From Chlorokybus atmophyticus (lineage: Eukaryota > Plantae > Mesostigma and Chlorokybus algae): a DNA stretch of 57,814 bases. The DNA is taken from the NCBI GenBank assembly GCA_009103225.1, contig RHPI01002438.1, positions 570,943 through 628,756 of the forward strand, given 5' to 3'. Below the pieces are notes generated by a model. The model saw only the letters and a list, made by a program, of their open reading frames with translations, made no database searches and was not told the origin of the DNA. The position numbers were made by a program, and so were the translations under genes. Of this stretch, positions 19,063-36,668 are shown one piece after another. The number at the start of each line of letters is the position of its first letter. The stretch's first letter is position 1.

Positions 19063-20429
19063 TATTGCTAGGACTGCTTCAATCAGTTATTTGTGACAAT
19101 GTGGGCAGTACTGTAGTACTTCCAAGAGACACACGTTGCTTTTGCTGCAGTCAAGCGTTGGCGCTGCTGGTCTGTGTACAGGGCGCCATTGGTCTGCACT
19201 GAGAGGCGCATGCACATGAGCACAGCCAACCACATACAACAGAAGTTGCCTGGCTTGCATGTCACATGTACCAGAACATGTACACAGCTGCAAGTGCAGG
19301 TAATATATGGCATGAGCAACCTAGCTGTAGTACAGTATGCACGAGGTCTAGTCACCACGATACCGTAAAAGGCACCGCACACAACACACCAAGACACAGC
19401 AGTGTGCAATGCTAAGGCTTGTCAGTACCCAGTGGTTTTCATGCACGATGAATCTGGCTATATGAGAGCATGCGACTTAATGTGTGCTGACATGTTTTCT
19501 TGTACATACATTTCTCTACGAGTTGGCAAGAAGCTGTTCCTGTCCCTCATGTCTTGCTCCTGCACACACAAGTATGGATGTAAATATTAAACTTGCGCTG
19601 CATACAATCAAGTAAGTGATGTTGCCAAGCTGCTTCCCTTCTCGTGCCTGCTTGCTTTTGATTGATGACACATGCTCACGTACCTTTATCAACTCGCTGA
19701 TGTCGGAGGAAGGTCGAGCGAGTTTGGTGAAGTTTGGGGCAATGCCCCCAACCTCGCACACATGCCGGTCCTCAACCCGACTTGCTGTTGTGTTGGCTGC
19801 ATGGGTGCAGAAGTAGAGCGCTGCATGCGCCACCGCAGACATAGCTTGCTCGATGGCAGCAGTCAGGCGAGTAGACGAAGGAGCACCAGGTGTGGTGGCT
19901 GGAGTTGTCCTGTCTGCTGCAGGGGACACCTGTTGCGTTTGCGGATGTACAGCATTGCATATGACACCACTTGAGTGTGCTGGTTATGCTCTTTGTGTAG
20001 TTTGAAGCTGCTTCTGCTTCAGAGTTGCAACAAGCGTTATCTCTAAACTGACAATTCACCGACAAATATCATCTGCCAAGTTGGTGTTACACCAGTATCA
20101 GCTGCAACCATAGAATTTGTAACCCACACGCACGCACACACCCACAAAAGCTGTGTATGCAACCAACACCTGGTAACACAAGTGTACTCCACCAGCGTTC
20201 AATGCTGTTGACAACACTGATAGCCATCCCGCTGTTCGGGTTCACGCTGAGCCTGCCCTTTGTTGGGGATGAGAGTGGTGTCAATTGCAGTTCACACTGC
20301 CAGAGCCCCAAGGCGAAGTAGAAAGGGGGAAGAGACAAGAAACTTGATGTGTTGGAGAAGCATTGCACAGTGGTCTTAGGATTAGGCTGGGAGTTCATTA
20401 TAGGGCAATACACTTCTTGTACAGTTTTA

Positions 20430-21021
20430 GGACTGTTGCATGCCGAGCACAACTCCAGATTGTTTGGGACTCCCCTTTGCCCAAAGGCGTAGCCTGCAAC
20501 AGCTCTGTAGCTGCCTTGGTTGGAAGCTGCTGCGCTTCCTCAATCTGATGCTCCACTCATCCCATACCCACGCAACACGTCCTTGTCGCGAGAGGTCACA
20601 ACTGCAACTCCCGGATCCAATCAATCAATGAAGCCGCGTCCCCAAGCAATGCACCCAGCAGGACGTCTGCTTGGGCAGCAGTCCAGACGTCATCAACCAT
20701 GAGCAGCACCCTCCTGTTGTGCAAGTGTCGTTAAGAAGAGCCAGTCCTCGAGCGATGGAAGTGTATGTGTTCGCTTCTCCACAAGAACTTCAAGCTTCTG
20801 CTGGTAGTAACGTTGGCCTGGCTTTGTCTGCCGCTTGCCCGACCCATAAAGCAATGGTCATTGCAACCATTGTGCAGCTGGTTAGAGTGCCTTCACAAGT
20901 GTCTTTGTAATGGCGCTCATGTCAACAAGCCGAGCGCCCTTCCTTTAGCATCAGCAGTTTGAGCGCCACTAAGACTGAGTGCTCCCAAACACCGATCAAT
21001 ACCCACAAAATTTTTGACCAC
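20430..21021 (-). pseudogene. Degenerate second NB-ARC copy
   Basis: Parallels 23000-22500: RMLLMVDDVWTAAQAD (Walker B) is kept, the P-loop is destroyed (GLLT*APL) and GLPL is lost. Confidence 0.8.
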
Positions 21022-23955
21022 TTACAAGGGAGGGTAGCCTAGACTGTTACTCACGGCGTGCACAACCGCTTGCGCTAGAGCAGCGTCATCCCAACTGAGA
21101 ATACAAACACAAATGAGTGCGCAGCACAGAACATCGGAGTAACCGTACTGCAAGAAACTCAACTCACTTGTACCGACTCAGCAGGAACCCACTGTAATAA
21201 GACACTTTGTGAATTGCTCGGATGTACCTCTCTCCATGTTCCAAGTGCCCAGGACGGCCATGCTCTTGGCATTTGCTGCAAGGCAAAACGCCACAGAATT
21301 AGGACTGCGCTTTGGAATAGGAAATAGTGCTAGTCTGTAGCTAAGTAGTATACTCACCGGATCTCTCTGAGAACCTGTTGCACTAGGTCCCCAATGCCAT
21401 GGTTTGAGATATCAATAAATATGGGCATGATCACAGCTGAGGGATCCTCCATCATCATGGCCAGCTCGTCAAGGCAATCGTAACATTCCCCAAAGTCAGC
21501 TGAGATGATGGGCATTCTGATGCGAGCGGCCTGCACACTGGCAGGGATAATATTATATGATTGGCCGGGCTTCAAGCTGTATCCACTGAAGGCACTCAAC
21601 CCTGCTCTGCTGAGACTGTCATGCAGCAAACCGATAAACTTGACGTCTGGATTTCTGTAAGTTAAGTGGATGTCATAACGCCCATAAATTACGATATACG
21701 CCTGTCGCCAAACACAGCCACAGAATAAATTGGAGACCCGTTCTTGACTGCAGCCATCGCATTCTAGTATCCGGAGCTGAGGCAGAACGCACATCGGGAG
21801 GCGACCTGTGAGGACGTTATTTGGAGTAGTAGAGCTGTGCCCTACCTTGTAGGATTGCCTCAGCGACAGATATTCCACATTTGATGTCTGCGCTCTACAA
21901 CTCTGCAAGCACAGTAAGGACACAAATGACAAATGACTAGTGGGCAACAGATGTATTTGCACGCGTACCATCGACAATAAGTCTTGAGCTTCCAGCAAAC
22001 CAACATGTGTGCCTTTGGCGCATGCAATTGCGCGCCCCATGCTGCGTAGCTGATCATGCATATACAGTTGATCTCCCCAGGTGGTCTTCTTGACATGGAC
22101 AAGGGACTTGTAGAAAAGATTTTCCAGTGTAGTGGATGCGTCTGCACGATCCTCCCAGCCAGGTGGAAGCCAGGTTGAAGAGTTAACGATGCGCCCGTTA
22201 CGCTGGACAGTCTGGCCTGTGAAACCTAGCGGAAGCCAGATTGGCGAGAGCTGACAACGCCATGGCCAGTTGCTTCCCAACGGAAAGCAGGCCATATCCA
22301 GAAACAGTCGCTGTGCAGCTGCATCAAGGCAGTCAAAACTAAGCTTAAGAACGCTCCAAAGGCCATCCACGTCTGCATTATTGAGTGGCTTCGCAGATCG
22401 CAATCTAGCCAAAGCACAGTCCCAAACATGCTGTTCGCCTTTACCACGAAGAAAAGAGCCTACCACCTGGAGCGTGAGCGGCAGCCCATTACATGCGGTG
22501 ACGAGAGGGCTCACGAACAGCTCTAGGCTGTTTGGGACTCCACCTTGCCCAAACGCGTAGTACCGGAACAGCTTTGTAGCTGCCTGGGTTGGGAGCTGCT
22601 GCACTTCCTCAATCTGATGCTCCCTCATCCCATACCCGCGGAGCATGTCCTTGTCACGAGAGGTCACACAAATGCAACTCCCGGATCCAATCACTGGCAC
22701 CTCATCCCCGAGCTGCAATGCACCCAGCAGGGCATCTGCTTGGGCAGCAGTCCAGATGTCGTCAACAACAAGCAGCATCCTCTTGTTGCGCATGTGTTGT
22801 TGTAAACGAGCCTTCCCTTGATCAATGGTGTATATGTTTGTGTTTGAAATTCCACAAAGCGCTTCAAGCAACTGCTGCTGGAGGAACATCAACCTGGCAT
22901 TATCTGCTGCTTGCCCGACCTCCACAAAGCAGTGGTCATTGAAACCATTGCGCAGCTTGTTGTAGAGTGCCTTAGCTAGTGTAGTCTTCCCAATGCCGCC
23001 CATGCCCCACAAGCCGAGCGCAACAGCCCTTCCTCCAGCAGCAGCAGTTTGAGCTCGCAACTTGACACTCAGTGCTTCAACACGCCGGTCAATGTCCACC
23101 GGGTGCTCGGCCACATACAAGGCAGGGTAGCCCAACTTGCCAAGCACGGCGCGAACCACCGATCGCGCTAGAGCAGCGCTGTCACTGAAGATACAAAACA
23201 CATCAGAGCGCGAAGCACAGGTACCAAAATGCCGATGTACACATGATGACACACAAGCTCAGACCCAACTCACTTGTTATGCTGATCCAGCCGCAACCCA
23301 TTAATGTCAAACACTTTACCAACCGCTTGGATATATCTCTTTGCACGATCTCTGTACCCAGGCTGGCCACGCTTGTGGTTTCTCCTGCCAGGGCTCACGC
23401 CATGATGCTGGATATTTGCTGCTAGTCTGCAATCAATCATCATTACAACTCACCAGATCTGTTTGAGGACGTGTTCCTTCAGTTTATGAAAATCGGGGTG
23501 GTAGAAAATGGGCATCACAGACAAGGGATCTCCCATCATTATGACCAGCTCTTCAAGGCAGCAGTAAGAATCCCCAAAGTTGACGGAGATAATGGGCATC
23601 TTGATGAGAGCGACCCGCAGATTGGCAATAATAACCTCCCACGCTGGGTCAGAGGGTTTTAAATTGAGCTCATCAACAAAGCCGGTCAACCCCGCTTTGA
23701 CGAGACCGTTGTGCAGGAAACTAACGAAGTTACGCTTGACGTCCGGGCCTCTGTGACTCAGGAAAACGTCACAAGGCGACAACCCAGCGCAATTAATGGT
23801 CGTCAACGGCGGTGCAGTTTCCTCTGTACTACTGGATTCCTTATATTGTCGCAAAAGGCAGTGACGCACAAATCGCACAAAGGCAAAGGCAGTGATGACG
23901 AGGAAAGCTGCGTAAGGTATTACTGTCAATCAGCGATAACAACGACAAACGCCAT
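21022..23955 (-). CDS. Hydrophobic-leader TIR-NB-ARC-TIR protein (TNL-like, essentially no LRR)
   Basis: TIR1: CDVFLSHRGPDVKRNFVSFLH...CLEELV. NB-ARC: GLWGMGGIGKTTLA, LLVVDDIW, VTSRD, CNGLPLTL, LKLSFDCL, LFLDMACF, MHDQLR. TIR2: YDIHLTYRNPDV...CLDELA. Small alphaE exons (RYIQAVGKVFDING; RYIRAIHKVSYYSG) splice in frame. Stop TAA at 21024-21022. The ATG at 23955 is one frame off the leader. Confidence 0.85.
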
Positions 23956-26120
23956 GTAGGAATAGGCAAGCCTCATTTGTTGACATGGGCACGTGGATAG
24001 ATTACACTGGCTCAGTGTACTTACATATGAGTATACATGCAATCAACGTGCTTGGCGTGTACGTAAATTCTCTCTCGTGCGCACACTCAAACAGAACAAG
24101 CGATGTCAACTGGGTAATCCGACGTACCTGCAAAGGGCAGCCACCCCATCTTTGCGCTGGCTTGCTGCTCAAGTGTCTGCAACAGTGCCCAGCATGTACT
24201 GCGGCGCGTACAACCACTGCTCCTGCCGCCCCACTTGTTGCGCTAACCTTTGCAACTGCTGAAGCGGCTTTGAAGAAAGAGGGTCACTTCCTGGGGCTCA
24301 GCACAAGCCTGCCCTGCTAGCCCTGCCGTTTCACACCCCTTGCAAACCTAGTTCTGCGCTGTGACGCTGTTACAGAAGCAACCAAAAACTGCAGTGGCAC
24401 CATCCGTCCATGTCAGGCATTTGCTGTGACCATGTTGCCTGCAAAGAAGCAGCGTCTCCTCTTTCATACCCTGCTGAAGCCATGTGCACTGCAGCATGCA
24501 CAACAAAACAAGACTTGGCATGTTCTTTGACTCAGGTTGCGAGAATGACATCATAACCAGTTCAACCACCCGAGGACTAGCACAACATGCAGGCATAGTA
24601 TGCACATTCGCTGATGTGCACTCACGCACACACAGAGGAGAAAGCAGAATGCACTGGAGTAGTAGTCCAAGATGGAGACCTGGGTTGAAGCTTACTTGCA
24701 GGCAGTTGCCAAGATACACCTCCTACACCTTGTGCTGTAGCAGCTGGCGCTCCACGGCTTGAAGACCCACGATGATCATAACCCATCCATGCTTGAGAGA
24801 GCAGCTTGGGAACACCCTGCGTGCTCACCGTGTGCGCAGACTGCATGCTGTGTGGATGTTGCATGCCTTAACGGCCTTAAGAGAACGCAGGAAAGAGTCA
24901 TGTCTCCTGGTGCTCAGCACATGCCTGGCAAGCCCTGACGTTCTCACAACTGACATGCGCAGCGCAACGCAGGGACGCAGCAGATGGTGCAGTGAGGTTA
25001 CTCCAGCCACGGTCACTTCCTATACAGCCCTGATCAACCCTGCAGCGCAACAGTAACCACAGTCTTTGTGACTTGCTGTGTTTGTATACAATTGCTCAGC
25101 AACAGCTTCTTCAATTGCGCAGCCTGATTGAGTATGCAGTATGCATATCTTAGGCAGTGTTATGTAACCCAATCAACCTGATAACGCATTACGTTCAGGA
25201 AGGTACAGCATATGGCTGTTCAGCGCAGGTGCACGCTTGGGCACGGCTTCAGACAGCACAGGTACCCGTGCTGTCATCAGTACGTTCGCAAAAGGGCGGG
25301 AGTCAACGCCTAGGTTGCTAGCTGAGCTTCTCAACAAACATGACTACTAATAGCTGCCCTGCCTGACAGCCGCTAGCAGAACTCAACTAAACACAACAAG
25401 GTAATTTGGGCATGATCACGCGAATGTGTGCATGCTCAGACTCTGGCGCTCAGCATTAAGATTGCAAGCACGTCAAGCTGGCTGCAGCTAGCGCAGTGGT
25501 GGAAGTTTGCAGTTATAAGTGGCAACTAGACTTTACAGACTTCACACAGGCCTAGAAGTTATTCGTCCATGGCACAGATGGTCCACACACGAGCGCAGCT
25601 GTCACGTTACAGCAGTCAGCTGGATGCTTGCTGCCGTCATTTCGTAGATAGCGTTGCTTTCCAAACAAGTTGTGACGTGACAGCCGCTCGGACGTCAAGC
25701 CACGATAGGACTCCTAGTTCTTACATTGCTAATATCGTAAGGGAACACTACATACCGCTGACACCTCGACCATTGCGCTAACTAAAGTCAGCTGATGCTT
25801 GCAAGCCACGATAGCTGCAGACACTGACACGGCACCTGCATGAGCGCTACGGAGAAAATGTAAAGGATTGATCACATGCACACACCGTGCAAGTTGCAAG
25901 TCAACGCCAGCTGGTGCGCTTTGAGCTGAGTACGGCTGGGGGAAGGAGGCACTGCGTAGCTGTGAACAGCAAGACGTCCGTGGCAGTCAGCCCTGCATGG
26001 CCAACTCCCCTTCACTTCCCACTCCCCCTTCGCCCTCCCCGTCCACTTCCCACACACCCGCCGCCCACCTCCTCTACGGCGAACTGGCAGAGGTGAAGGC
26101 AAAGCACAATGTTGCTGGGC

Positions 26121-27068
26121 ATTAACTTAATGCCATTAAGGCCTCGTCAGCGTCAGCGTCAGGACCGCACGTAGTTTGTACGATCGGTGCAAACCGCTAT
26201 GCCATTGGTGTTCTTTCATACAGAGTTGCTATGCAATTGGCTGGCTCTGGGCATACATTTAATGCCGTAGAGGACTTACCTGCCGTATCGCACCCCTTGT
26301 GCGCCAGCCATCGCTGAGCACCTTGTGCGCACAAGCTCGTTGTGCGCACACGTTTACCACAACCGCCGTATGGCCCCGCCACCCATGTGCCTGTCGCTAA
26401 GGCTATCGGCGGAGGCGGCGGCAAGCACCGGCGTGTGAACAGTGTCGTATCCCACCCACCCTGATTTCCTCNCTGAGCACCTTGTGCGCACAAGCTCGTT
26501 GTGCGCACACGTTTACCACAACCGCCGTATGGCCCCGCCACCCATGTGCCTGTCGCTAAGGCTATCGGCGGAGGCGGCGGCAAGCACCGGCGTGTGAACA
26601 GTGTTGTATCCCACCCACCCTGATTTCCTCTTCCTCACACTGTATACACCGGTGTTTGCACGAACACGATCTGGCATGTATCGAGGTCGAGCGCAAGCTG
26701 TTGCTAGATCCAACAGCTTGTTGTGGACGGCTTTGACACTTCCGCGTGTTGGTGAATTAGACGGTGCAGACATGTTGTCTTGACACCGTACGATTTCACA
26801 GTCTTTCACCAACTGGGTTGCAGCTGGGGCAGACTTGTAGCGCATGCTGCCGCAAAGGAACGCATCCCAATTAATGCAATCCATTGTGCCCCCCATACCC
26901 AGCCAGCTGTTTACCCCTCTTTGGCTGCGTGCAACCAATGAGACGCTAGTCTGTAACAAGATTGAACACCGTGGAGACTCTGTGCTTAATTAACTTAATG
27001 CCATTAAGGCCTCGTCAGCGTCAGGACCGCACGTAGTTTGTACGATCGGTGCAAACCGCTATGCCATT
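26121..27068. repeat. Segment bounded by about 80-86-bp direct repeats (26121-26206, 26989-27068)
   Basis: attaacttaatgccattaaggcctcgtcagcgtcag(cgtcag)gaccgcacgtagtttgtacgatcggtgcaaaccgctatgccatt occurs twice. No TSD seen. Confidence 0.8.
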
Positions 27069-28055
27069 AATGATGGCAATGAGTTAGGCCTATGACCCAT
27101 AACTCTTGGTTAAGTTCGGGTGCGAAAGGCGACATGTATCTTCAGTCACTCTTGATTCCCGAGCAGATTATAGCTCATCATGCTTGTTGAGGCGTGTGGG
27201 CGGGGAGGAGGGGGCGGGATGCGACGCCGCCTATTGTTAAGGCGAAGCTCAAAGGCAGTCAGGCTTGCATATGGAGGCAGGTGCTGTGCGTGTTGCTGAT
27301 CAACAGTCTCAGCATGTCTCGTGCCTGCCAACATTGCTGCTGAGCCTTGGAGCCTGGTACCATTTTCAGTTTGGGAGAAAAACCCGTCGGTACTTGGTCT
27401 TCACACAGACTGACTCTCTCTCTCTTTCCCCCCTCCTAAATATGTCAGTCAGAACGCCTCAACACACTGCGCCGAGCCCGTCCTGTATGACATGCTCAAG
27501 GTCATGTGTTTGCTTGACCTACAACTGTTCACAGCTGGCGCAGTGAATTCCCTCGTTTTTTTGTTAACACATCATGCCGTCACAAGGTTACAAGCGGTGC
27601 TATACATCCACATTCGCTGACACATTTACACCTTGGCAGGCAAGTTTCAGCGTAGGCGCTTTGTCGCTGTCTTATAGAGTTTTTGTCTTCACATTACCGG
27701 TAGGTGTCGCAACAATTTGTATAAGCAAACGAGATGACCATGCGATGCTTGTCTTGCCCAAACTGGTCTTTGCACGACAGCATTTTGCTTGGCTGCCGTG
27801 GCAGCGCCCTGCTCTGGTGCGACAAGAAAGGAGACGAAGGACACTTGAAGATGGCTGACATGGTTGGCATCATTACCGCTCTGGCAACTGCGACGGGTGT
27901 GATGTTTGGGATATACTTCTTCATACACAATGGAAGGGATGCTCTGAGCAGACAGGCAGCCGACCTGCACAACCGCTATGGTGATGTCGGTGATGCAATG
28001 GATGTGATTGAGTTTTGCAATGAATGCCTCACTTTAGGGCAAAGAGAGAGCTATT

Positions 28056-29922
28056 CACACCGATTGACGTCAAAGGACCATAAATGGTCCGTACCCTCGA
28101 ACCGGGATTTTGCCCTTCTAAGTGAATTCCGTGGACCATGTCTGGTCGGACTGTCATTGACAGTCCGACCATGCATGGTCCAAAACTCACGTGAACGGTC
28201 CCATGTTTTTTTGGGGTCGCACCATGTCTGGTCCGGCCTGTTTACGGTCGCGTCAGGACCAGGTACGAGCCAGTCAGCGGACCAGGGACTTAACAAAAAC
28301 ATTTATTTACCAGTCATTACTGGTCCGGCCAGCGGACCATCGACCGTAATATTTATTTATAAGCATCAGATGTAATGCAAATGACGGAAAAGTGCTCTAT
28401 CTTGAGCCGGCAGCACCGGCTACGCCCGACCTGCGGGGCTGCAGGCTGCAGCGCACGAGGCCGCGGCGTCTTAGAAATGATTAGTGAAGAAATCATGCAT
28501 CTATCGAGAGTCGAACCCAAGACCTTTGGGACACAAACACGACACCCTAACCACTAAGCTACATGTGTACGTACCGGTAGGGACGGTGCAGTACTTGCAG
28601 AATAGACTGTACCGACGGCCGCTTGGCATCTGTCGGCGGCGGAAATTGCACAGGAAGTCGGCGTTGTGAATTGACAGGCCCATAGCCAGTGCATGCGCTA
28701 TCAATGTGCATAGGCTGTACCAGTATTAATCCACGGTATCATTATTTTACGTCATTATTGATGACACAGGCAGCCGCAACTCGGCGGCTGCCAAGGTGTG
28801 TAAACTACAATGCTTTGTTGGGGGCTGTCCATGAGTATGTAACCTTGTTTGGGGTTGTCAATATCCTGGTTGCGTGCGCATACACACACCTACATGTGTA
28901 CATATGTAAACATTCGTGTATAGATACATATACACGTTTACATGATATAATTACGAAACGACGAGCATTGCGGCATTAATGTAGGTATTTATTGGCTGAT
29001 TAGACACAATGTTTGGTCGGGGCTGTCAATCATTCTGCGGTCTCATAAGAGGCTATGTTCATAAGTGATGTAATTTATGTATACTCTTAATACATATGTT
29101 TACATGAGACATACCTTGTACACGGCTCACCCAATAATACGGCTGATATAGCCATCTATAATGCGTATAAGATATATCCATTTGTGCACACGCTAATATT
29201 CATATATCTGTATAAAATATTATATATTTAATGTTCATATATACGTAGATACCGAGATAAACGCATAGAACATGTTAATGGTGCATGATCACAAATTCTT
29301 GCAACTACACGTACGGTGCTATGAAGTATGTTAATTGCATAGACAGCCCCTTACAGCTTAGTTGACAGCCGGCCGGCTGTCAATCAGCCGCCGACCATTT
29401 GCGGCTATCCACTTGCGGCTGTCCACGGTGTATAGCCGACAGTCGGTGCGGCTGTCGGCTATACACGCCGTCAATTAACACGTTAAGTGCTCTTGTGCAA
29501 TCAGGCAGTTAGGCAATCTATTGTACCTTACGCAGGTTGTTGCTACCTACTCATGATAGCGGCAGGGCCGCGGTCACTGGTCCGTGCTGCACCGTATATA
29601 GAGCGGCGCGGACCGTGCGTGTATAGAGCGGCACCATGTACGGTGCATGCTAATAGGGCCACAGAACTGCGGGACCGCACCTGGTCCGCATTCAAGGGCC
29701 AGCGTACAGTACTGGTTCGTGCCGCACCATCCATGGTGCGGCACGGACCATGCGTGGTGCGCGTCGCCGCGCCAGCCATTCACGGGCCGCGGAGCCCCGA
29801 ATGGACCAGGAACGGTCCGTCCCCCGCGGACCAGGCAGTCCTGGCCCGCGGGATACGGACTATGCATGGTCCGCGGGGTCCGTGAAAGGACCATGCATGG
29901 TCCTTCAACGTCAAGCCGTGTG
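28056..29922. mobile_element. Non-autonomous CACAC-ended DNA transposon (CMC/EnSpm-like), 1867 bp
   Basis: 35-bp imperfect TIRs (29/35 identical), ATT target-site duplication (28053-28055, 29923-29925), and palindromic GGACCAT-NN-ATGGTCC subterminal repeats. Confidence 0.85.
28496..28565 (-). ncRNA. tRNA-derived (SINE-like) sequence inside the element
   Basis: Minus strand GTAGCTTAGTGG (A-box) and GGTTCGACTC (B-box) at tRNA spacing, with a degenerate acceptor stem. Confidence 0.55.
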
Positions 29923-30798
29923 ATTATGCTGTCTTCAAGCGGGATCGGCCAAGGCACATTGAAGAAGCCAGGGCCAAGTTGAGAAACTTTTGGGATTGGT
30001 TGTAACGCAATATGAGAGCGGTTCGATTTCAAAAGACGTGCTAGCATTTACGAACGACTGGTTGGCAAGAGGCAACAACTACCGGTTGCTGGTGGAGCCT
30101 ATTGACATTGCCAACTGGTACTCTCTAAGGGGGGCAAATTATCATTGCAGTTCGGGCAAGCACTACCTCCGTCTCTCGCCTATCGAGGCTGTTGTGAGGC
30201 CACGGCGTTATTACATGCTAAAGCGGGCATACCGCAACGCATACCTCGAGAGGAATGAGAGCTCAATTGACTGCGCGTCAAAGGAGCTCATGGCAGCTGG
30301 AGTCATAGCCAATCGCCAGATGGACAATGACCTTAGGCTCCCAGCGCATCAGCTCTCTGATGAGAAGGCAATCCGTGACTGACTGCGAGGTTCTATGGAG
30401 AATCAAGCTCACTGAGTCAATGGGCATGGTAGCCCACCCCAACACCTATTGAATACCTCAGACAATAAGACAACATATGGCCGACGCTTGTCAATATTTT
30501 AGAAGTACATTGCATTTGCTGGCATGTATATGCAAGAACTATGACCTGACGCGTAGCATGCCGACGCACACACACAAACACAGCAAATCAAACAAGCAAA
30601 CTGTCGGGTCGAGGGGAGTCGAGGGTCACGCTGTCTCGGACAGCTGCAGGGACAGACATGCTTGCTAGACATGCTACTGCGCCACATTTGTAACGCGCAG
30701 CAAAAGCAAAAGATGACCCAACCCTCATGGTGACAAGTGCTTTGTGCAGCTGGTCTGCTGCTGCCGGGTAGTACGGGCAGGTGAAGTCGGGGTTCTCC

Positions 30799-31040
30799 CT
30801 AGTGTACATGCTGTGCTGTAGGACACACAGTCAAAAAAACGTGAGAGAGGAAGGCTTGAGACACCCTCCTGCTGCTCTTGTCGGGTAATGGTACCAGCTC
30901 CACCCATTTGGAGAAGTGCTTGATCATGTCCAGGATGTAACGGTTGCCACGCGCTGAGGGTGCCCAGTCTCCCAAGATGTCGAGCCCCCACCGGTAAAAG
31001 AGACCGGAGATGGGGAGTGGGTGAATGCGAAGCTCAGCTC
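30799..31040 (-). pseudogene. Integrase core fragment
   Basis: LFYRWGLDILGDWAPSARGNRYILDMIKHFSKWVELVPLPDKSS, typical of the start of an rve domain. Confidence 0.8.
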
Positions 31041-32950
31041 CAGCAGCCATACCATGCTGTTCTGGTCCATGGCGCGGCCAAGCAGCTGGCATTGCTGACT
31101 ATCTGTCAGCGATGAGCCCGTGATGCTGCTGGGGAAGAATCCCATGGCGCGTTCACGTTCGCGTGCGTTGGGTTCCTCCAGCCTGTTGGTGGTCGCATCA
31201 AACACCATCCCGTCACCACCATTCCAAAATGTGTAGGAGCCTGGGTAGGACACCAATGTGGGGAGTGCGCGACGGGGCTGACCGGGCTGATTGCACGGGT
31301 AGAAGTGGTTGTGGTCATAACGCAGGACAGGTTGTGCTTTGCGGCCGGGGTCAAGGATGTCATCCACCAGCAGGTTGCGCGGCCGAGCGCTGCGTGTGTA
31401 TTGCGGTCATGAGCTCCTCCACGAAGGCCAAGTTTGTCCACTTGGCCCGTACACGATGTGCGCGCAAGCCATGTCACCTTGAGTGGGTGCCCCAAAATGG
31501 AGCAAATTTGTCGGTAGCTGGAGGCCACGTGCGGGCGCTTGTCGTCCTTTAAATGCACATTTTCAATGACGTACCCCAGGGGTCTGAAGATCTGGTGGTG
31601 TTGAAGGAGGTGAATGATTCTCATCAGCTCCCAAAATAGCCCTGAGCGAGGGTCTTCGAGGCCTTGCCCCTTGCCTGCCCTGGAGTGCCCTTGGCATTCC
31701 CACGCAGCTATTAATAGGTCGACGTTGCCGAGGGACAGTGGGTGATCTTCGGTGATCAGCCGGATGTCTTGTGGCAACGCTTTGAGGCTGCCTTGCAACG
31801 CCGAGAGGGGTAGTTGCTGTGGATATCTCTCGTGCAGTTGGCGTAAGTGGTGCTTGAGGGCCGTTTGCGTGTGTGGGTCTGGGTCGCAGTAATGGTACTT
31901 GACAACCTTCACACCTGTGTTGAGGACAGCGGCAAGACCACTGCCAATGCCTCCAAACAGCTCCAACACTGTGATGCCCTGCTGCCTGCGAAAGGTGTGG
32001 AACTCCACCATTCCGGTGGCCACCATATGCTGGTCCTGCACCTTGTTGTGGCTCCGGTAGTTGGGGAAGCGCGTGGTGATCAGTGGCTGGCTCAGCAAGA
32101 CGTGTGCGTCCACCTGTGCGCGCCAGCGCCGTTCGGCTTGGTCTTGTAATGCTACTTCCACGGTGGCATCCTCCCGCTCCTCGTTGTAAGGGGTGGGAGA
32201 GGAGTCGACGGTTCGACACGGAGCCGTGGCACCAGCAGCGACTTTCGTCCGAGCGCTGTCGTATGTGGCCGCTGCAGCCTCCCGTGTGAGGGCGTGGCTG
32301 CGCGTGGCCACGGCAGCCACTTTGCGTTGGGTGCGCGTGCGCGAGACCAACTCGAGAGGCAGGAAACTCTGCACCTCTCCGTCATCCTTATCCCAATGTG
32401 GCCGAAACCACGCCCGCTCTGTCCAGCAGTCGAGGCCCATGCCCACAGAGAAGTTGAAGTCCTGCCCAAGCAGAAAGGCGAAGGAGCCGGCATTGATGAC
32501 CACACATTGCTGGATGATCTCGGTTGTGTGGGTTGGGTCCAGCCCTGTCAACCGAATGCAAAAGGCCTCCCTGGTGATTCCCATCACCTTATCTCGGCTA
32601 CCTGTGGCAGTGTCTAACACGTACGGGCAAGGCATTAAGTCGGAGCTGGTTATGCCGAGGGATCGCGCGAGGAAGCGCCCGATGATGACAGGCTGTGCTC
32701 CGGTGTGCAGCATCACTCGCTTGGGTGCCAGGCCGTTAATGGCGACGTGATTGCCTTGGTTGGCCACCATGGCAGCATTCGCGTTGATGCGGCCTCTTTG
32801 TACGAGCTGTCTGCACCTTTGCCTTAGTTCTCTCAGCTCGGGGTGCTGAGCGCATTGCAGCCAGAGCTCCTCTGCCTGCTGGGTCCGGAGGACCGCCTCC
32901 TTGCCCTCTCCCTCTGCCGAACCGACCTTGTCTTGGTGGTTGGTAGACAC
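30924..32950 (-). pseudogene. pol fragment: aspartic protease (LHTGA, catalytic D to H) plus Dnmt3-like C5-methyltransferase, frameshifted
   Basis: VLELFGGIGSG (motif I), AAWECQGHS (IV), GLEDPRSGLFWELMRII, YVIENV (VI), AHRVRAKWTNL in a shifted frame (VIII), ERERAMGF...LLGRAMD (IX/X). Confidence 0.85.
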
Positions 32951-35040
32951 GGGGGGGCCTCGGTGCTGAAGGTTCCGGCGCCGGTTGTGGTGGCGGCGCA
33001 GGTGGATGCTGCCTCTGCGAAGATGGAATCATGCCCGCGGGTGTACCCAATGGCTGTGGAGGAAACCCCGGAGGATCCGGTGTTTGTGGGCCTGCCTCGC
33101 GTTTAGCTTGCTCCGCGGCGTACGTCCATCGGACAGCGTGAGCCGCCTCTCTGACCAACGTCCCTTCCCACGTGACCGTGGGCTCGGTGTCCATGTTGGT
33201 CCAGTGATGATATTGAGGCATGGGCTGCAGGTATACGGCGCGTAGTAGCTGTCGCCGCATGTCGTGGGTGATGGTGGGGACTCGCAAGATCCCTGCCATG
33301 TAGGCATCCCACCTTCCTTGTACCACTCCCACATCGAGCACGGTCATGACGCCCGCGCGTAAGGTGCGCTGGAGGTCAGTCTGCTGTGCGTGTAGCACAT
33401 GAGCAATGGCGATGCGCCGCCGTTGTCGTGCGGCTTCCACCCCTGGCAGCCGCAGCATTGCCTCTTGCACTCCCTCCAGCGTATCCGGGGCCGTGGTGGC
33501 AGCCTCGTCGTATGCTTGTCGCAGCGAACGAACGAATGCCCCCAACCATGATGCTCGGTTGCCAAAGGCAAACAGGGGGACAGCAGGGTGATTGGCAACA
33601 AGCCATGTCACGAGATGAGCTCGAGCGGCGCTGCCCTCTCGCATCCCCATTATTTGTCTTGATGTGTTGCCCTCAGGCCTGTGCAGCATGACTGCTTGTC
33701 GAATGAGTGCGGTACGGAGTTGTTGCTCCCCCACCATACCAGCTCCTGCTCGTTGTATGGTGTCCCTTTGCGGGGTGAGGTACCCTCGCCCTGCATTGCG
33801 TTGATCCTCAGGCATGTCTTCAACCAAAGGAGGCAGCAGCGGGGCGATTACCCCCCTCAATTGTTGTGCCAACGCCCGCGCTTGGTCTGCAACATTCGCT
33901 TGTCCTGGCTGTGCGATGGCGACTGCCGTGGAGTGCACTATGGTCAGCGCCGTGGAGGCGCTGGCGACATCTGCCGGCGCTGCGGCTGGTACGGCAACGG
34001 CGTGTGCTGCTTCGTACGCCTGTCGGCGCGCGTCCACTTTGGCAGCTTGATCCACCCGATATCGATGTGCCTGTTCGAGGGCAGAGAACCGCTCTTGACG
34101 GCTGCCTTGAGTGAGCCCCCGAAGTGCGGGATCGGTGCCCAGCGCAATGTCCGACGTGGTGACCACGAGGTCTTGTATTTTGCGACGCTGGAGTCCGAGT
34201 GGGTCCAGTGGTGAGGGCTCGAAGTCGATCTGTTGCGCGGGCATTGGTTGCCGCGATTGACTGGGAGCGCCCTACAACCTCGCGTGTAATGCCAAGCACA
34301 ACTGAATGGCCAGCTCTAACACTGCAGGTCGCCGGTAGGTGACCCCGAAGAGACGATCCCTCATCTCCGGAGCAGTGCCGGCGAGGATTTCATCCTCCAG
34401 CTGCTGTTGTGTGGGTTCAAGCAGCGTGTGGTACTCTGGAGGTGGTAGGGGCAAGATGCGATCATCGCGTGCCACGCGCGTGGTGCGTTGCCCCCCTGGT
34501 CCGTACGCAATGGTGGTGGGCTCCACGTTGTGTAGAATCGACGCCCAAGCGCGTTCTGCTTGTGGTCTGCGTGGCACTTGCTATGTGACATCAAGTGCTG
34601 GTGGCGGTGCTGTTCGAACTTCATGTAGTGGTGCAGTGGGTGTGGCAGCAATACTTGAGGCGATGGTTGTGGCACCTGCAGCAGTCGTTGTCACTGAGGT
34701 GGCGGCTGTGAGGGTGGCAGTAGTTGTGGCCGATGTGGTTGCTTTAATGGAGGCAGGAGTGGTGGCTTCACCACCCACGAACCCAACGACCATGGTTGTT
34801 GCGGCGTTGATGCTTTCCATCACCGGGGACAGCGTGGTGCCAAGACTGCTGGCACCTGCTGTCGTGGTCGGTGTGGATGCCGACGGTGTCGTTGGCGGCG
34901 TCGTCCCAGCAGTGGTTGTGGCTGCCGAGGCAGCACCACTTGTGGCGTCCGTCGATGCCGCTGTTAACGACGCGCCAGCTTCCCTGCGCGCACGTCTTGA
35001 TGGTTGTACGCGTGACGGCGTGGGAGTGTCCCTATCCCGT
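32736..35040 (-). CDS. Long unknown reading frame between gag and protease (502-aa ORF, extended upstream through two in-frame stops)
   Basis: ORFs 34581-34823, 34272-34577 and 32736-34244 share one frame and are separated only by TAG codons. Confidence 0.5.
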
Positions 35041-36668
35041 TAAGGCCATCAACGCCCACCTAGCAGTATAGCAGGCTTGATAGTTCTGCTCCTTGTTCTC
35101 CTCCAATTGTGCCACGCGCGCCATCAGGGCTGCCACTTGGTCAACAGCTGGTGGATTGGCTGGTGCCTTTACAGCAGCAGCTGCGGCGCGAGGACGTCCC
35201 TCAGGTCCTTTGTGCTGTGGAGGGCGGTTTTCCCCTCTGTAGCCAGCCTCTTCCTTGCGTGCCCCGGCGTTGTTGTTGTTGTTGGGGTTGTGGCTACCAG
35301 CATTGTTGCCGTCGTTGCGACCACCAGCGTTAATGCTGTTGTTGTAGCCGCCAGCGTGGTTGCTGTTGTTGTAGCCCCCGTTGTTGTTGTTGTTGTTGTT
35401 GTTGCCGCGGTAGCCCACAGCGTTGTTGCTGTTGTTGTAGCCAATGGAGGGCCGCAGCTCAGGGAACTTGAGCCAGCATACTGTCTCCAAGTGTCCCGTC
35501 TTGTGGCAGTAGTCGCACACAAGGTTGCCGTAATCTTCGGTGCACTCCTTTTGGTAGTGACCATGCCGACCACACCGGTGGCACAGCACTGGAGCCACAA
35601 GGGCAGCATGAGCTGACCGTATGTCCTTGTTGTGGATGCCTTGCGGCTCTCGACTGCGCTCCCGCCGAAGGGGCTCTGCACTTGTGCCTGCCATAGGCCG
35701 CGAGGCACTGTGGTTGGTGTCCAGCACTGCTTTCTCATACACCGCGCGCTTATGAATGGCTTGTGCAGTCTCGAAAGCTTCCTTGAGGGTGTAGCCGAGG
35801 GGCCTGCTGTAGTTCAGCGTCAGGCGCGTCGACTCGCTCAGGGTGGGATCCAACTCGGCCACATACACCATTACTGCCGCCTCCTCACTGACGATCTTGT
35901 AGTCAGTGTCTTTAAGCAACCCTTCCAACCGTGAATACAGTCGGAGAGGGTCCTCGTTGGGCTTCCGTCGAAAACGCCTCAACTCCTCCACCTCGCTGTT
36001 GGTTTGAGGTGGGAAGGTGCGCTGGAGTGCGGCGTAGAGGTCCTTCAACGGGGAGTCCGACATGGCAGCGCCCATCGTAAGCGCGGGTGCACGCAATACC
36101 ACAAAGCCGAGGGTGAAAACACTGCCTCCTGCTGGAGCACGCGAGTTCGGTGTTGGTAGCAGGGGCGTACCCATCTCCAATGCTGCAGCTTGCTGCTCCT
36201 CTTGTTGCTCCTTAATAATGGCAGCGGTGCGGTTGAGTATCTTGATCCAGCGCTCGGCCTTCTTGACCTTGATCTCTGCAGGAGTTTACAAGGCCCCTAC
36301 CACCTCAACTTCTTCATTCTCTGCCTTCTCCATGGCTGCAGCTAGAGTGAGACCCGTGACTGAGGCTGGCGGGGCCGCTGCTACAGAGACAATAGCCGAT
36401 GGGCTATGCAGTGACGTGGAGGCTATGGTGCTAGCCAACTCGCCATAGCCATCAATTTGTGCAACTAAACGACGGACTTTGACACATCATGTGCTTCGTG
36501 ATCAAGGTATCGAGCGGACACATGAAACGATACCTCATCTGTCCAGTCCTTGCTCCTAAGGGCTTGCTGCCGCATCTTTGAGTGGAACTTGGTAATGAAC
36601 TCATCAAGTGAGGTGGTGCCAGGGCGTCCGAAGAAGCGTAGGGAGTTGGTTGAGCTGGAAGGCTCCAT
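35032..36668 (-). pseudogene. gag with two zinc knuckles; N-terminal part interrupted
   Basis: CHRCGRHGHYQKEC and CDYCHKTGHLETVC; capsid-like RFRRKPNEDPLRLYSRL; N-terminal FFGRPGTTSLDEFITKF. Confidence 0.85.

What the first reader, a model, noticed from the sequence alone, without database searches (positions are those of the whole stretch)
21022..30382. Head-to-head TIR-NB-ARC-TIR and EP-only genes: a candidate ancestral TIR-EP signalling pair
Seen: the two genes diverge from starts about 3.9 kb apart (23955 minus, 27851 plus), and both begin with a hydrophobic helix. Established: in seed plants TIR products signal through EDS1-family dimers whose EP domains are essential, but those genes are not normally clustered with TNLs. 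Inference: physical linkage may reflect an earlier, membrane-associated TIR-EP module predating the lipase-EP fusion. One locus cannot exclude chance.
Basis: inference. Interest (0 to 1): 0.8.

Follow-up and report, generated by a model that had tools for sequence, protein, structure and literature searches.

The report
Algal TIR-NLR and EP gene pair
In the early-branching green alga Chlorokybus, a TIR-type immune receptor gene and a gene for the lipase-less "EP" sensor domain of the plant immune hub EDS1 diverge from a shared 3.9-kb spacer; this copy looks damaged, but the same pairing recurs in other algal DNA, so how TIR immunity signals outside seed plants becomes testable.

Summary
Both genes are present. 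On the minus strand lies a hydrophobic helix-TIR-NB-ARC-WHD gene with no LRR. It runs in frame into a second, weaker TIR, and a decayed second NB-ARC follows, so this is the remnant of a tandem TNL duplicate. On the plus strand lies a membrane helix plus a genuine EDS1-type EP core (Pfam 31 bits), with no lipase and no TIR.

The ATG at 23955 is one base out of frame with the TIR reading frame. The EP gene has a 1-nt frameshift at about 29999, inside a conserved helix, relative to its closest paralogue (Chlorokybus Chrsp114S01653, 66% identity). I found no RNA evidence and no annotated protein for either gene.

The EP family is truly homologous to EDS1/PAD4/SAG101: profile E 5e-25, and the top 24 fold matches are all EDS1-family chains.

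The linkage is unlikely to be chance:
- Six of nine EP loci fetched from other assemblies carry TIR and/or NB-ARC within 10 kb.
- Four of those are head-to-head like this one, and Myrmecia bisecta has the EP gene flanked by two TNLs.
- EP-TIR and SEFIR-EP fusions exist.

The claim that this predates the lipase-EP fusion is untested.

The scan had already noted algal EP/TIR coupling on other pieces of this genome.

The parts
23454..23929 (-). TNL exon with a hydrophobic helix (VIPYAAFLVITAFAFVRFV) and TIR1. The catalytic-type Glu is kept in the CLEEL motif.
   Evidence: Pfam TIR 42.8 bits, profile positions 3-103 of 179. Kyte-Doolittle 2.1. Donor CTG|GTGAGT lies at 23454|23453.
23926..23955 (-). 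Candidate ATG (23955) that reads MAFVVVIAD-stop, one base out of frame with the TIR1 ORF. The start of the gene is unresolved.
   Evidence: Read directly from the sequence and from the stop-to-stop ORF table.
23185..23453 (-). Intron 1 of the TNL (GTGAGT ... CTTCAG), which keeps the reading frame.
   Evidence: Phase calculation. The same donor and acceptor pattern is seen in the second unit.
21358..23184 (-). TNL exon 2: NB-ARC with intact P-loop, kinase-2, GLPL and MHD motifs, then WHD_ROQ1, then about 115 residues with at most 1-2 LRR-like motifs, then TIR2.
   Evidence: Pfam NB-ARC 103.7 bits, WHD_ROQ1 25 bits, TIR_2 21.5 bits (below its cut-off of 28). TIR2 is 44% identical to TIR1. No LRR match to the LRR of a relative.
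21022..21094 (-). Short last exon (24-residue tail plus stop), made from the start of the second, decayed NB-ARC unit.
   Evidence: Acceptor TTCTCAG|T at 21095|21094 and stop at 21024-21022.
20411..21105 (-). Pseudogenised second NB-ARC. No P-loop in the alignment (seven-residue gap over GMGGIGK), at least 6 in-frame stops and a frameshift.
   Evidence: tblastn alignments against the first NB-ARC, 41-48% identity.
23956..27850 (.). Spacer of 3.9 kb between the divergent genes. It holds a 159-nt tandem duplication (26311-26628) and direct repeats of up to 56 nt lying 862-868 nt apart (26121-26206 and 26989-27068). No recognisable coding domain.
   Evidence: Repeat search. Pfam on the spacer ORFs found nothing.
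27851..28090 (+). EP gene exon 1: ATG, a membrane helix (IITALATATGVMFGIYFFI), and the first conserved EP-family helix (GDAMDVIEF). The exon end at 28090 (TCC|GTACCC) is inferred from phase only.
   Evidence: tblastn with P0001 residues 41-88 matches 27869-28012 at 46% identity. Kyte-Doolittle 1.97. Sequence read.
28091..29915 (+). Intron of about 1.8 kb, filled with repeats including GGACCATG-type palindromes. The contigs laid on it differ from the window by several bases, as other copies of a repeat would.
   Evidence: Inverted repeat I1 at 28132-28182. Summed word depth of 13-34 in bins 28058-28845 and several mismatched contigs. M. bisecta P0009 has an exon boundary roughly 15-20 residues downstream of the equivalent position.
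29916..30005 (+). EP exon 2, frame A: the conserved helix (PCDYAVFKRDRPRHIEEARAKLRNFWDW), which then runs into a stop codon.
   Evidence: tblastn with P0001 residues 97-122, 61.5% identity, E 1e-6. Translation.
29999..30000 (+). Frameshift site. Relatives read W-V (tgg gtt), whereas the window reads tgg-ttg-taa, with one G missing.
29999..30382 (+). EP core in frame B. It carries WLARGNNYRLLVEPIDIANWY, KHYL and RPRRYY, and every invariant or nearly invariant family residue is kept. The stop is at 30380-30382.
   Evidence: Pfam EDS1_EP 31 bits. 66% identity to P0001. Conserved columns from alignment A1.
31106..36180 (-). Retroelement ORFs downstream of the EP gene (aspartyl protease, C5 DNA methylase, zinc knuckle). 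Contig word depth rises steeply from about 30422.
   Evidence: Pfam. Depth table.

Best explanation
This locus is a real but probably decaying copy of a recurrent algal arrangement. A TIR-type NLR gene and a gene for a lipase-less EP-domain protein sit next to each other, here head-to-head.

The EP gene belongs to a Chlorokybus family of short proteins with one N-terminal membrane helix and an EP domain. That domain is homologous in sequence and fold to the N-terminal three quarters of the EP domain of seed-plant EDS1/PAD4/SAG101.

The receptor is one TIR-NB-ARC-WHD unit that lost its LRR and became fused to the TIR of a second unit whose NB-ARC has decayed.

Inferred mechanism for intact members of the module, by analogy with seed plants and not shown here: the TIR domain makes NAD-derived nucleotides, and the EP protein, anchored in a membrane and probably acting as a dimer, binds them and passes the signal on.

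In this copy, as assembled, the EP reading frame is broken by a 1-nt deletion and the receptor's start is out of frame. The pair is therefore more likely a relic than a working pair.
For: Shown:
- Domain content of both genes.
- Frame-preserving canonical introns in the TNL.
- A decayed second NB-ARC and no LRR.
- The EP core keeps all 4 invariant and 12 nearly invariant family residues. These include the R of RPxRY that aligns with AtEDS1 R493, a residue on the surface needed for TNL immunity.
- The family profile hits only EDS1/PAD4/SAG101 in the PDB, with E from 5.5e-25 to 5e-16.
- The AlphaFold model of paralogue P0001 (pLDDT 83) has EDS1-family chains as its top 24 Foldseek hits.
- The frame break relative to P0001 and all relatives.

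Linkage:
- Fusion proteins P0005 (helix-EP-TIR-EP) and P0020 (SEFIR-EP) exist in Chlorokybus.
- Head-to-head TIR or NLR next to EP occurs in L006, L008, L009 and L010.
- In Myrmecia bisecta (L003) the EP gene is flanked by two TNLs.
- L005 has EP followed by TIR on one strand.
- These loci fall in at least three divergent EP lineages (tree).

Context from the literature: Chlorokybus TIR domains trigger EDS1-dependent cell death in Nicotiana benthamiana.
Against: - There is no RNA evidence. The only run that holds the stretch is a set of low-depth contigs that does not cover either frame break.
- No annotated protein matches either gene.
- The frame breaks could be assembly errors. Alternative acceptors at 29971|29972 or 29978|29979 would give an open frame-B product that lacks one conserved helix.
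- Three of nine foreign EP loci show no TIR or NB-ARC (L004, L007, L011).
- One TNL-anchored locus with 10 kb upstream (L001) has no EP.
- The organisms behind most foreign loci are unknown, the loci may not be independent, and TIR gene density in those genomes was not measured.
- Ligand binding, dimerisation and membrane location are inferred, not shown.
Confidence: 0.65

Rival explanations
1. The pair is intact and working. Both 1-nt frame breaks are assembly errors, or are bypassed by splicing or an upstream exon, and the two genes are co-regulated from the shared spacer as a signal maker and a signal sensor.
For: - The EP core shows no other sign of decay; all conserved residues are kept.
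- The NB-ARC motifs and both TNL introns are intact.
- Single Ns and a 739-N gap in the window show that the assembly is imperfect.
- Frame-B acceptors exist (reasoned).
Against: - A 1.9-kb NB-ARC ORF and retroelement ORFs of 1.1-1.8 kb are uninterrupted, so indel errors are not frequent here.
- The receptor has no LRR and is followed by a clearly decayed paralogue.
- A repeat-filled 1.8-kb intron and a retroelement abut the EP gene.
- Public collections hold no annotated or transcript-derived protein for either gene.
Confidence: 0.25
2. The two genes are chance neighbours. They merely lie in the same repeat-rich, fast-evolving region, and the pairing has no functional meaning.
For: - A 3.9-kb spacer with repeats is not a tight bidirectional promoter.
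- NLR genes tend to sit in dynamic regions (general knowledge).
- Three of nine foreign EP loci lack TIR neighbours.
Against: - Six of nine foreign EP loci have TIR and/or NB-ARC within 10 kb, four of them head-to-head, in at least three EP lineages.
- Even if a genome had one TIR/NLR gene per 200 kb (an assumed, generous density), six or more of nine would be expected with probability of about 5e-5.
- EP-TIR and SEFIR-EP fusions exist.
Confidence: 0.08
3. The EP-like region is only a short convergent motif (VEPxDIANYY) and is not a true EP domain.
For: - The Pfam match of the window ORF covers only profile positions 59-98 of 211.
- The literature speaks of 'short EP-like sequences' in green algae.
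Against: - The family profile aligns about 110-180 residues to EDS1/PAD4/SAG101 with E down to 5.5e-25, and nothing else in the PDB matches.
- The predicted fold matches only EDS1-family EP domains.
- Paralogues match Pfam positions from about 10 to 124.
Confidence: 0.02

Closest known systems
EP domain of seed-plant EDS1 / PAD4 / SAG101 (Pfam PF18117)
   Same: - Sequence homology: Pfam 31 bits for the window ORF, and family profile E 5.5e-25 against rice EDS1 and 1.8e-24 against AtPAD4.
- All-helical fold with the VEPxDIANYY and RPxRY motifs.
- The equivalent of AtEDS1 R493 is kept.
- Genetic association with TIR proteins.
   Different: - There is no N-terminal lipase-like domain; a single membrane helix stands in its place.
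- The domain is shorter: Pfam positions from about 10 to 124 of 211, or roughly AtPAD4 302-477 of an EP domain that spans 300-541.
- It occurs in an alga, outside the seed plants to which the family is assigned in the literature.
- This copy is frame-broken.
Plant TIR-NB-ARC-LRR receptors (TNLs, Roq1-type winged helix)
   Same: - TIR with a catalytic-type Glu, NB-ARC with all motifs, and a WHD_ROQ1 hit.
- The best named relatives are angiosperm and moss TNLs at 27-34% identity.
- The closest unnamed relatives (L001, L002) are canonical TIR / NB-ARC / LRR genes.
   Different: - No LRR.
- A hydrophobic N-terminal helix.
- A short TIR (profile positions 3-103 of 179).
- A second, sub-threshold TIR at the C-terminus that comes from a decayed tandem unit.
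Head-to-head paired NLR genes of flowering plants (sensor/executor pairs such as RRS1/RPS4)
   Same: Two immune genes are kept in divergent orientation and work together (review).
   Different: Here the partner is not a second NLR but an EP-domain protein. Co-function has not been shown.
Bacterial Thoeris-type systems (a TIR signal maker plus a signal-sensing effector encoded side by side)
   Same: This comparison rests on general knowledge and on the text seen.
   Different: - No homology between the sensors.
- These are eukaryotic genes with introns, not an operon.

Membership tests
EDS1 family (EDS1/PAD4/SAG101) | C-terminal EP domain (PF18117) above the Pfam gathering score | tested here: met
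   The window ORF 29963-30379 scores 31 bits against a cut-off of 23.1. The family profile scores E 5.5e-25 to 5e-16 against solved EDS1/PAD4/SAG101 chains.
EDS1 family (EDS1/PAD4/SAG101) | N-terminal lipase-like alpha/beta-hydrolase domain in the same protein | tested here: not met
   Exon 1 encodes a membrane helix and an EP helix only. No Lipase_3 hit occurs in the gene or in the Chlorokybus paralogues scanned (P0001-P0005, P0008, P0011, P0020).
EDS1 family (EDS1/PAD4/SAG101) | Full-length EP domain (about 211 profile positions, about 240 residues) | tested here: not met
   Matches cover Pfam positions from about 6-32 up to 91-124 in the family. The profile alignment to AtPAD4 ends at 477 of 541.
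EDS1 family (EDS1/PAD4/SAG101) | EP-domain fold | tested here: met
   This was tested on paralogue P0001, not on the broken window protein. The AlphaFold model has pLDDT 83.4, and its top 24 Foldseek PDB hits are all EDS1, PAD4 or SAG101, with probability 1.00 and TM-score by query 0.38-0.50.
EDS1 family (EDS1/PAD4/SAG101) | Conserved basic residue of the EP cavity surface (AtEDS1 R493) | tested here: met
   AtEDS1 490-494 (RPTRY) aligns with the family motif RPxRY. The window has RPRRYY.
EDS1 family (EDS1/PAD4/SAG101) | Dimer formation and binding of TIR-made nucleotides | tested here: inconclusive
   The homodimer prediction for P0001 78-258 gave no verdict. Ligand binding cannot be tested with these tools.
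Algal membrane-anchored EP-only family (Chlorokybus P0001-P0004, P0011) | N-terminal hydrophobic helix plus EP core, and nothing else, in an open reading frame | tested here: inconclusive
   The helix, the EP core and the C-terminal end all match P0001, and the window copy is sister to P0001 with support 100/97. The frame, however, is broken at about 29999 as assembled.
TIR-NB-ARC-LRR receptors (TNL) | TIR domain | tested here: met
   PF01582 at 42.8 bits for TIR1. TIR2 is below its cut-off.
TIR-NB-ARC-LRR receptors (TNL) | NB-ARC with P-loop and MHD motifs, and a Roq1-type winged helix | tested here: met
   PF00931 at 103.7 bits and PF23282 at 25 bits against a cut-off of 24. The motifs were read from the translation.
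TIR-NB-ARC-LRR receptors (TNL) | C-terminal leucine-rich repeats | tested here: not met
   No LRR family appears in Pfam. tblastn with the 464-residue LRR of relative L002 finds nothing in the window.

The most novel reading that the evidence does not exclude
Adjacent, often head-to-head, TIR-NLR and lipase-less EP genes, together with EP-TIR fusions, form an old two-part immune module of green algae. In it, EP-domain proteins read TIR-made nucleotides. On this reading the sensor half of the EDS1 pathway predates land plants, and the seed-plant EDS1 family is a later lipase-bearing derivative, or a sister, of this module.
Probability: 0.35. Interest if true: 0.85.

Novelty: new variant of a known kind. 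Interest (0 to 1): 0.62.

Why it matters
The papers I could search treat the EP domain as the hallmark of the seed-plant EDS1 family. They also leave open how TIR receptors signal in lineages without EDS1, even though Chlorokybus TIR domains need EDS1 to kill Nicotiana cells.

A lipase-less EP family that keeps turning up next to, or fused with, TIR genes in algae gives concrete candidates for the missing reader of TIR signals.

This locus adds one more instance, probably a decaying one. It also prompted the cross-locus comparison that makes chance unlikely. The locus itself is not the best copy for experiments; intact paralogues such as P0001 and P0005 are better.

Tried and rejected
- RNA support: the search for sequencing runs gave a single run of unknown type, kept as contigs. 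Laid on 25300-31200, it covers mostly repeats. It gives one exact 166-nt contig over 30232-30397 but nothing over exon 1 or the frameshift site. It therefore says nothing about expression or about the missing base.
- Word-index protein search with the EP ORF: no hit in the permitted length range. This says nothing about longer relatives.
- Genomic context of P0001: not on record.
- Homodimer prediction of P0001 78-258: no verdict, and I do not use it as evidence either way.
- ESM Atlas feature search and Atlas fold search: only weak, unrelated rows.
- Bacterial promoter/terminator scan of the spacer: not applicable to a eukaryote, so I ignored it.
- Pfam on spacer and intron ORFs: nothing.
- A 24-nt GT..AG 'intron' that would join the ATG at 23955 to the TIR frame: rejected as too short.
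- Only a 24-residue TNL tail was translated across a splice junction inside a script, to check the phase.

Full report
**Source**

The window is eukaryotic, with introns and about 53% G+C. Earlier notes of this scan name the genome as Chlorokybus. Independently, the closest relative of the EP gene is the JGI Chlat1 protein Chrsp114S01653 of Chlorokybus atmophyticus (P0001, 66% identity).

**Minus-strand gene**

- ORF 23929-23453 begins with a strongly hydrophobic stretch (Kyte-Doolittle 2.1) and then a TIR domain (42.8 bits).
- A canonical intron (CTG|GTGAGT at 23454|23453, CTTCAG|T at 23185|23184) joins it in frame to a 634-codon ORF.
- That ORF carries NB-ARC (103.7 bits) with P-loop, kinase-2, GLPL and MHD motifs, and a Roq1-type winged helix (25 bits). 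About 115 residues follow, and then a second TIR that scores below the Pfam cut-offs and is 44% identical to the first.
- The same donor and acceptor pattern follows the second TIR.
- That tail is the beginning of a second NB-ARC. The second NB-ARC has no P-loop in the alignment (a seven-residue gap over GMGGIGK) and carries at least six in-frame stops and a frameshift (21105-20411).
- The closest relatives, on two ENA contigs, are ordinary TIR / NB-ARC / LRR genes without a hydrophobic leader. Their LRR finds nothing in the window.
- I therefore read 'TIR-NB-ARC-TIR' as one TNL unit that lost its LRR and ran into the TIR of a decayed tandem duplicate.
- The ATG at 23955 reads nine codons and a stop, and it is one base out of frame with the TIR ORF. 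The start is unresolved.

**Plus-strand gene**

- The ATG at 27851 opens a membrane helix and the helix GDAMDVIEF, which matches P0001 residues 41-88.
- About 1.8 kb of repeats follows.
- Homology then resumes at 29916-30002 in one frame (conserved helix ...EEARAKLRNFWDW; E 1e-6 to P0001) and runs into a stop at 30003.
- The EP core (WLARGNNYRLLVEPIDIANWY ... KHYL ... RPRRYY) continues from 29999 in another frame to the stop at 30380.
- All relatives read straight through this point, so one G is missing as assembled.
- The core itself is undamaged: all invariant and nearly invariant family positions are kept.
- Acceptors at 29971|29972 or 29978|29979 could give an open product that lacks the conserved helix. 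I could not test this.
- The protein ends where P0001 ends, and it has no lipase and no TIR, so 'EP-only' is correct.

**Is it a true EP domain?**

Yes, at the family level.
- The window ORF passes the Pfam threshold (31 bits against 23.1).
- A profile of 23 family sequences hits only EDS1, PAD4 and SAG101 among all PDB sequences: E 5.5e-25 for rice EDS1 413-557, 1.8e-24 for AtPAD4 302-477, and 3.5e-16 for AtEDS1 398-506.
- An AlphaFold model of P0001 (pLDDT 83.4) has EDS1-family chains as its top 24 Foldseek hits. The next hits, translin chains, have low probability.
- AtEDS1 R493 lies on the EP surface needed for TNL immunity. It aligns with the second R of the family's RPxRY motif, which is present in the window.
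- The algal domain is shorter than the seed-plant one, and the lipase half is replaced by a membrane helix.

**Is the linkage chance?**

I fetched every EP relative that had a contig on record and re-annotated each locus with tblastn. There are nine foreign loci.

| Locus | Source | What lies near the EP gene |
|---|---|---|
| L003 | Myrmecia bisecta (Trebouxiophyceae) | EP gene between two co-oriented TIR-NB-ARC-LRR genes |
| L005 | unidentified | EP ORF followed on the same strand by a TIR, as in Chlorokybus P0005 |
| L006 | unidentified | TNL head-to-head with EP, plus a TIR ORF downstream and another NB-ARC |
| L008 | unidentified | TIR-TPR gene head-to-head, about 1 kb away |
| L009 | unidentified | TIR head-to-head, about 4 kb away |
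| L010 | unidentified | TIR-NB-ARC head-to-head, about 0.7 kb from a membrane-helix EP gene |
| L004 | unidentified | nothing found |
| L007 | Scytosiphon (brown alga) | nothing found |
| L011 | unidentified | nothing found |

- Six of nine loci therefore have TIR and/or NB-ARC within 10 kb, and four are head-to-head.
- If TIR/NLR genes occurred once per 200 kb (my assumption, not a measurement, and generous for algae), six or more of nine would have probability of about 5e-5.
- Orientation alone is not significant: five of six, counting the window, gives p of about 0.1.
- The TIR-linked loci fall in at least three separated EP lineages, and the partner receptors differ in type (LRR or TPR).
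- Chlorokybus also has helix-EP-TIR-EP (P0005) and SEFIR-EP (P0020) proteins.
- Caveats: the organisms are mostly unknown, the loci may share ancestry, and one TNL-anchored locus with 10 kb upstream has no EP.

**State of this copy**

No RNA run was found. The one run that holds the stretch is a set of sparse contigs that miss both frame breaks. No protein in the public collections corresponds to either gene. Long uninterrupted ORFs nearby argue against frequent assembly indels. My estimate is about two to one that the breaks are real and the pair is a relic.

**Mechanism (inferred)**

In seed plants, TIR NADase products (pRib-AMP/ADP, ADPr-ATP/di-ADPR) bind a pocket between the EP domains of EDS1-PAD4 or EDS1-SAG101 and recruit helper NLRs. 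By analogy, intact algal EP proteins would read TIR products at a membrane. Nothing here shows binding, and a dimer prediction gave no verdict.

**Comparison with the literature and novelty**

The papers I could search assign the EP domain to seed plants and mention only 'short EP-like sequences' in green algae. I found no paper that describes EP-TIR coupling in algae. This scan had already noted such coupling on other pieces of this genome. My loci are an independent check and agree with those notes.

The claim that the module predates the lipase-EP fusion is open. L005 carries class-3 lipase exons followed on the same strand by EP exons.

Noticed in passing
L005:5088-8375 (minus strand), ENA ERZ22854972 NODE_514: Two consecutive ORFs cover a class-3 lipase with a GHSLGG nucleophile elbow (Pfam Lipase_3 at 49 and 28 bits; rice EDS1 is among the best PDB hits). 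About 2 kb further on the same strand lie an EP N-terminal helix ORF and an EP core ORF (EDS1_EP, 48 bits). This is a candidate lipase-EP (EDS1-like) gene on an unidentified eukaryotic contig, right beside an EP-TIR gene and a TPR protein.
   Followed up: partly
L003:1-22261 ([Myrmecia] bisecta, GCA_040144395.1): The EP protein P0009 (KAK9811796.1) lies between two TIR-NB-ARC-LRR genes. Its N-terminal part gives a weak MLKL_N-like hit (19 bits, below the cut-off), which hints at an executor-type four-helix bundle fused to EP.
   Followed up: partly
L007 (Scytosiphon promiscuus) and L004 (ENA ERZ26962164): EP-only proteins also occur in a brown alga (P0013, P0026) and cluster with an unidentified 700-kb contig (support 99/98). 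These two loci have no TIR neighbour. The EP family therefore reaches outside green plants.
   Followed up: partly
P0006 (Arabis alpina KFK28610.1, 2011 aa): One annotated protein holds two Lipase_3-EP units followed by TIR-NB-ARC-WHD-LRR. Either EDS1-family genes are merged with an adjacent TNL by annotation, or this is a real fusion. Either way, EDS1-family genes and a TNL are neighbours in a seed plant.
   Followed up: partly
window 31106-36180 (minus strand): Retroelement ORFs with an aspartyl protease, a C5 cytosine DNA methylase domain (39.7 bits) and a zinc knuckle lie just downstream of the EP gene. Contig depth rises to 45-300 from about 30422, so the element is repeated.
   Followed up: no
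window 26121-27068: A 159-nt unit is duplicated in tandem (26311-26628, 99% identical, with a single N). It is flanked by direct repeats of up to 56 nt lying 862-868 nt apart. One contig of run X1 'goes back 776', as a tandem or circular form would.
   Followed up: no
window 28100-29900: The EP intron is filled with GGACCATG-type palindromes (for example 28132-28182, 25-nt arms, 92% complementary). Several contigs at 90-97% identity lie on it, so it looks like a dispersed short repeat family.
   Followed up: no
window 23454-23929 and 21358-21674; L001, L002: The TIR domains of this algal TNL clade match only the first 100 or so of 179 Pfam positions. The exon ends right after the (V/I)MPIF strand, and the next exon starts at the helix before the NB-ARC, so the alpha-D region seems to be missing.
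   Followed up: no
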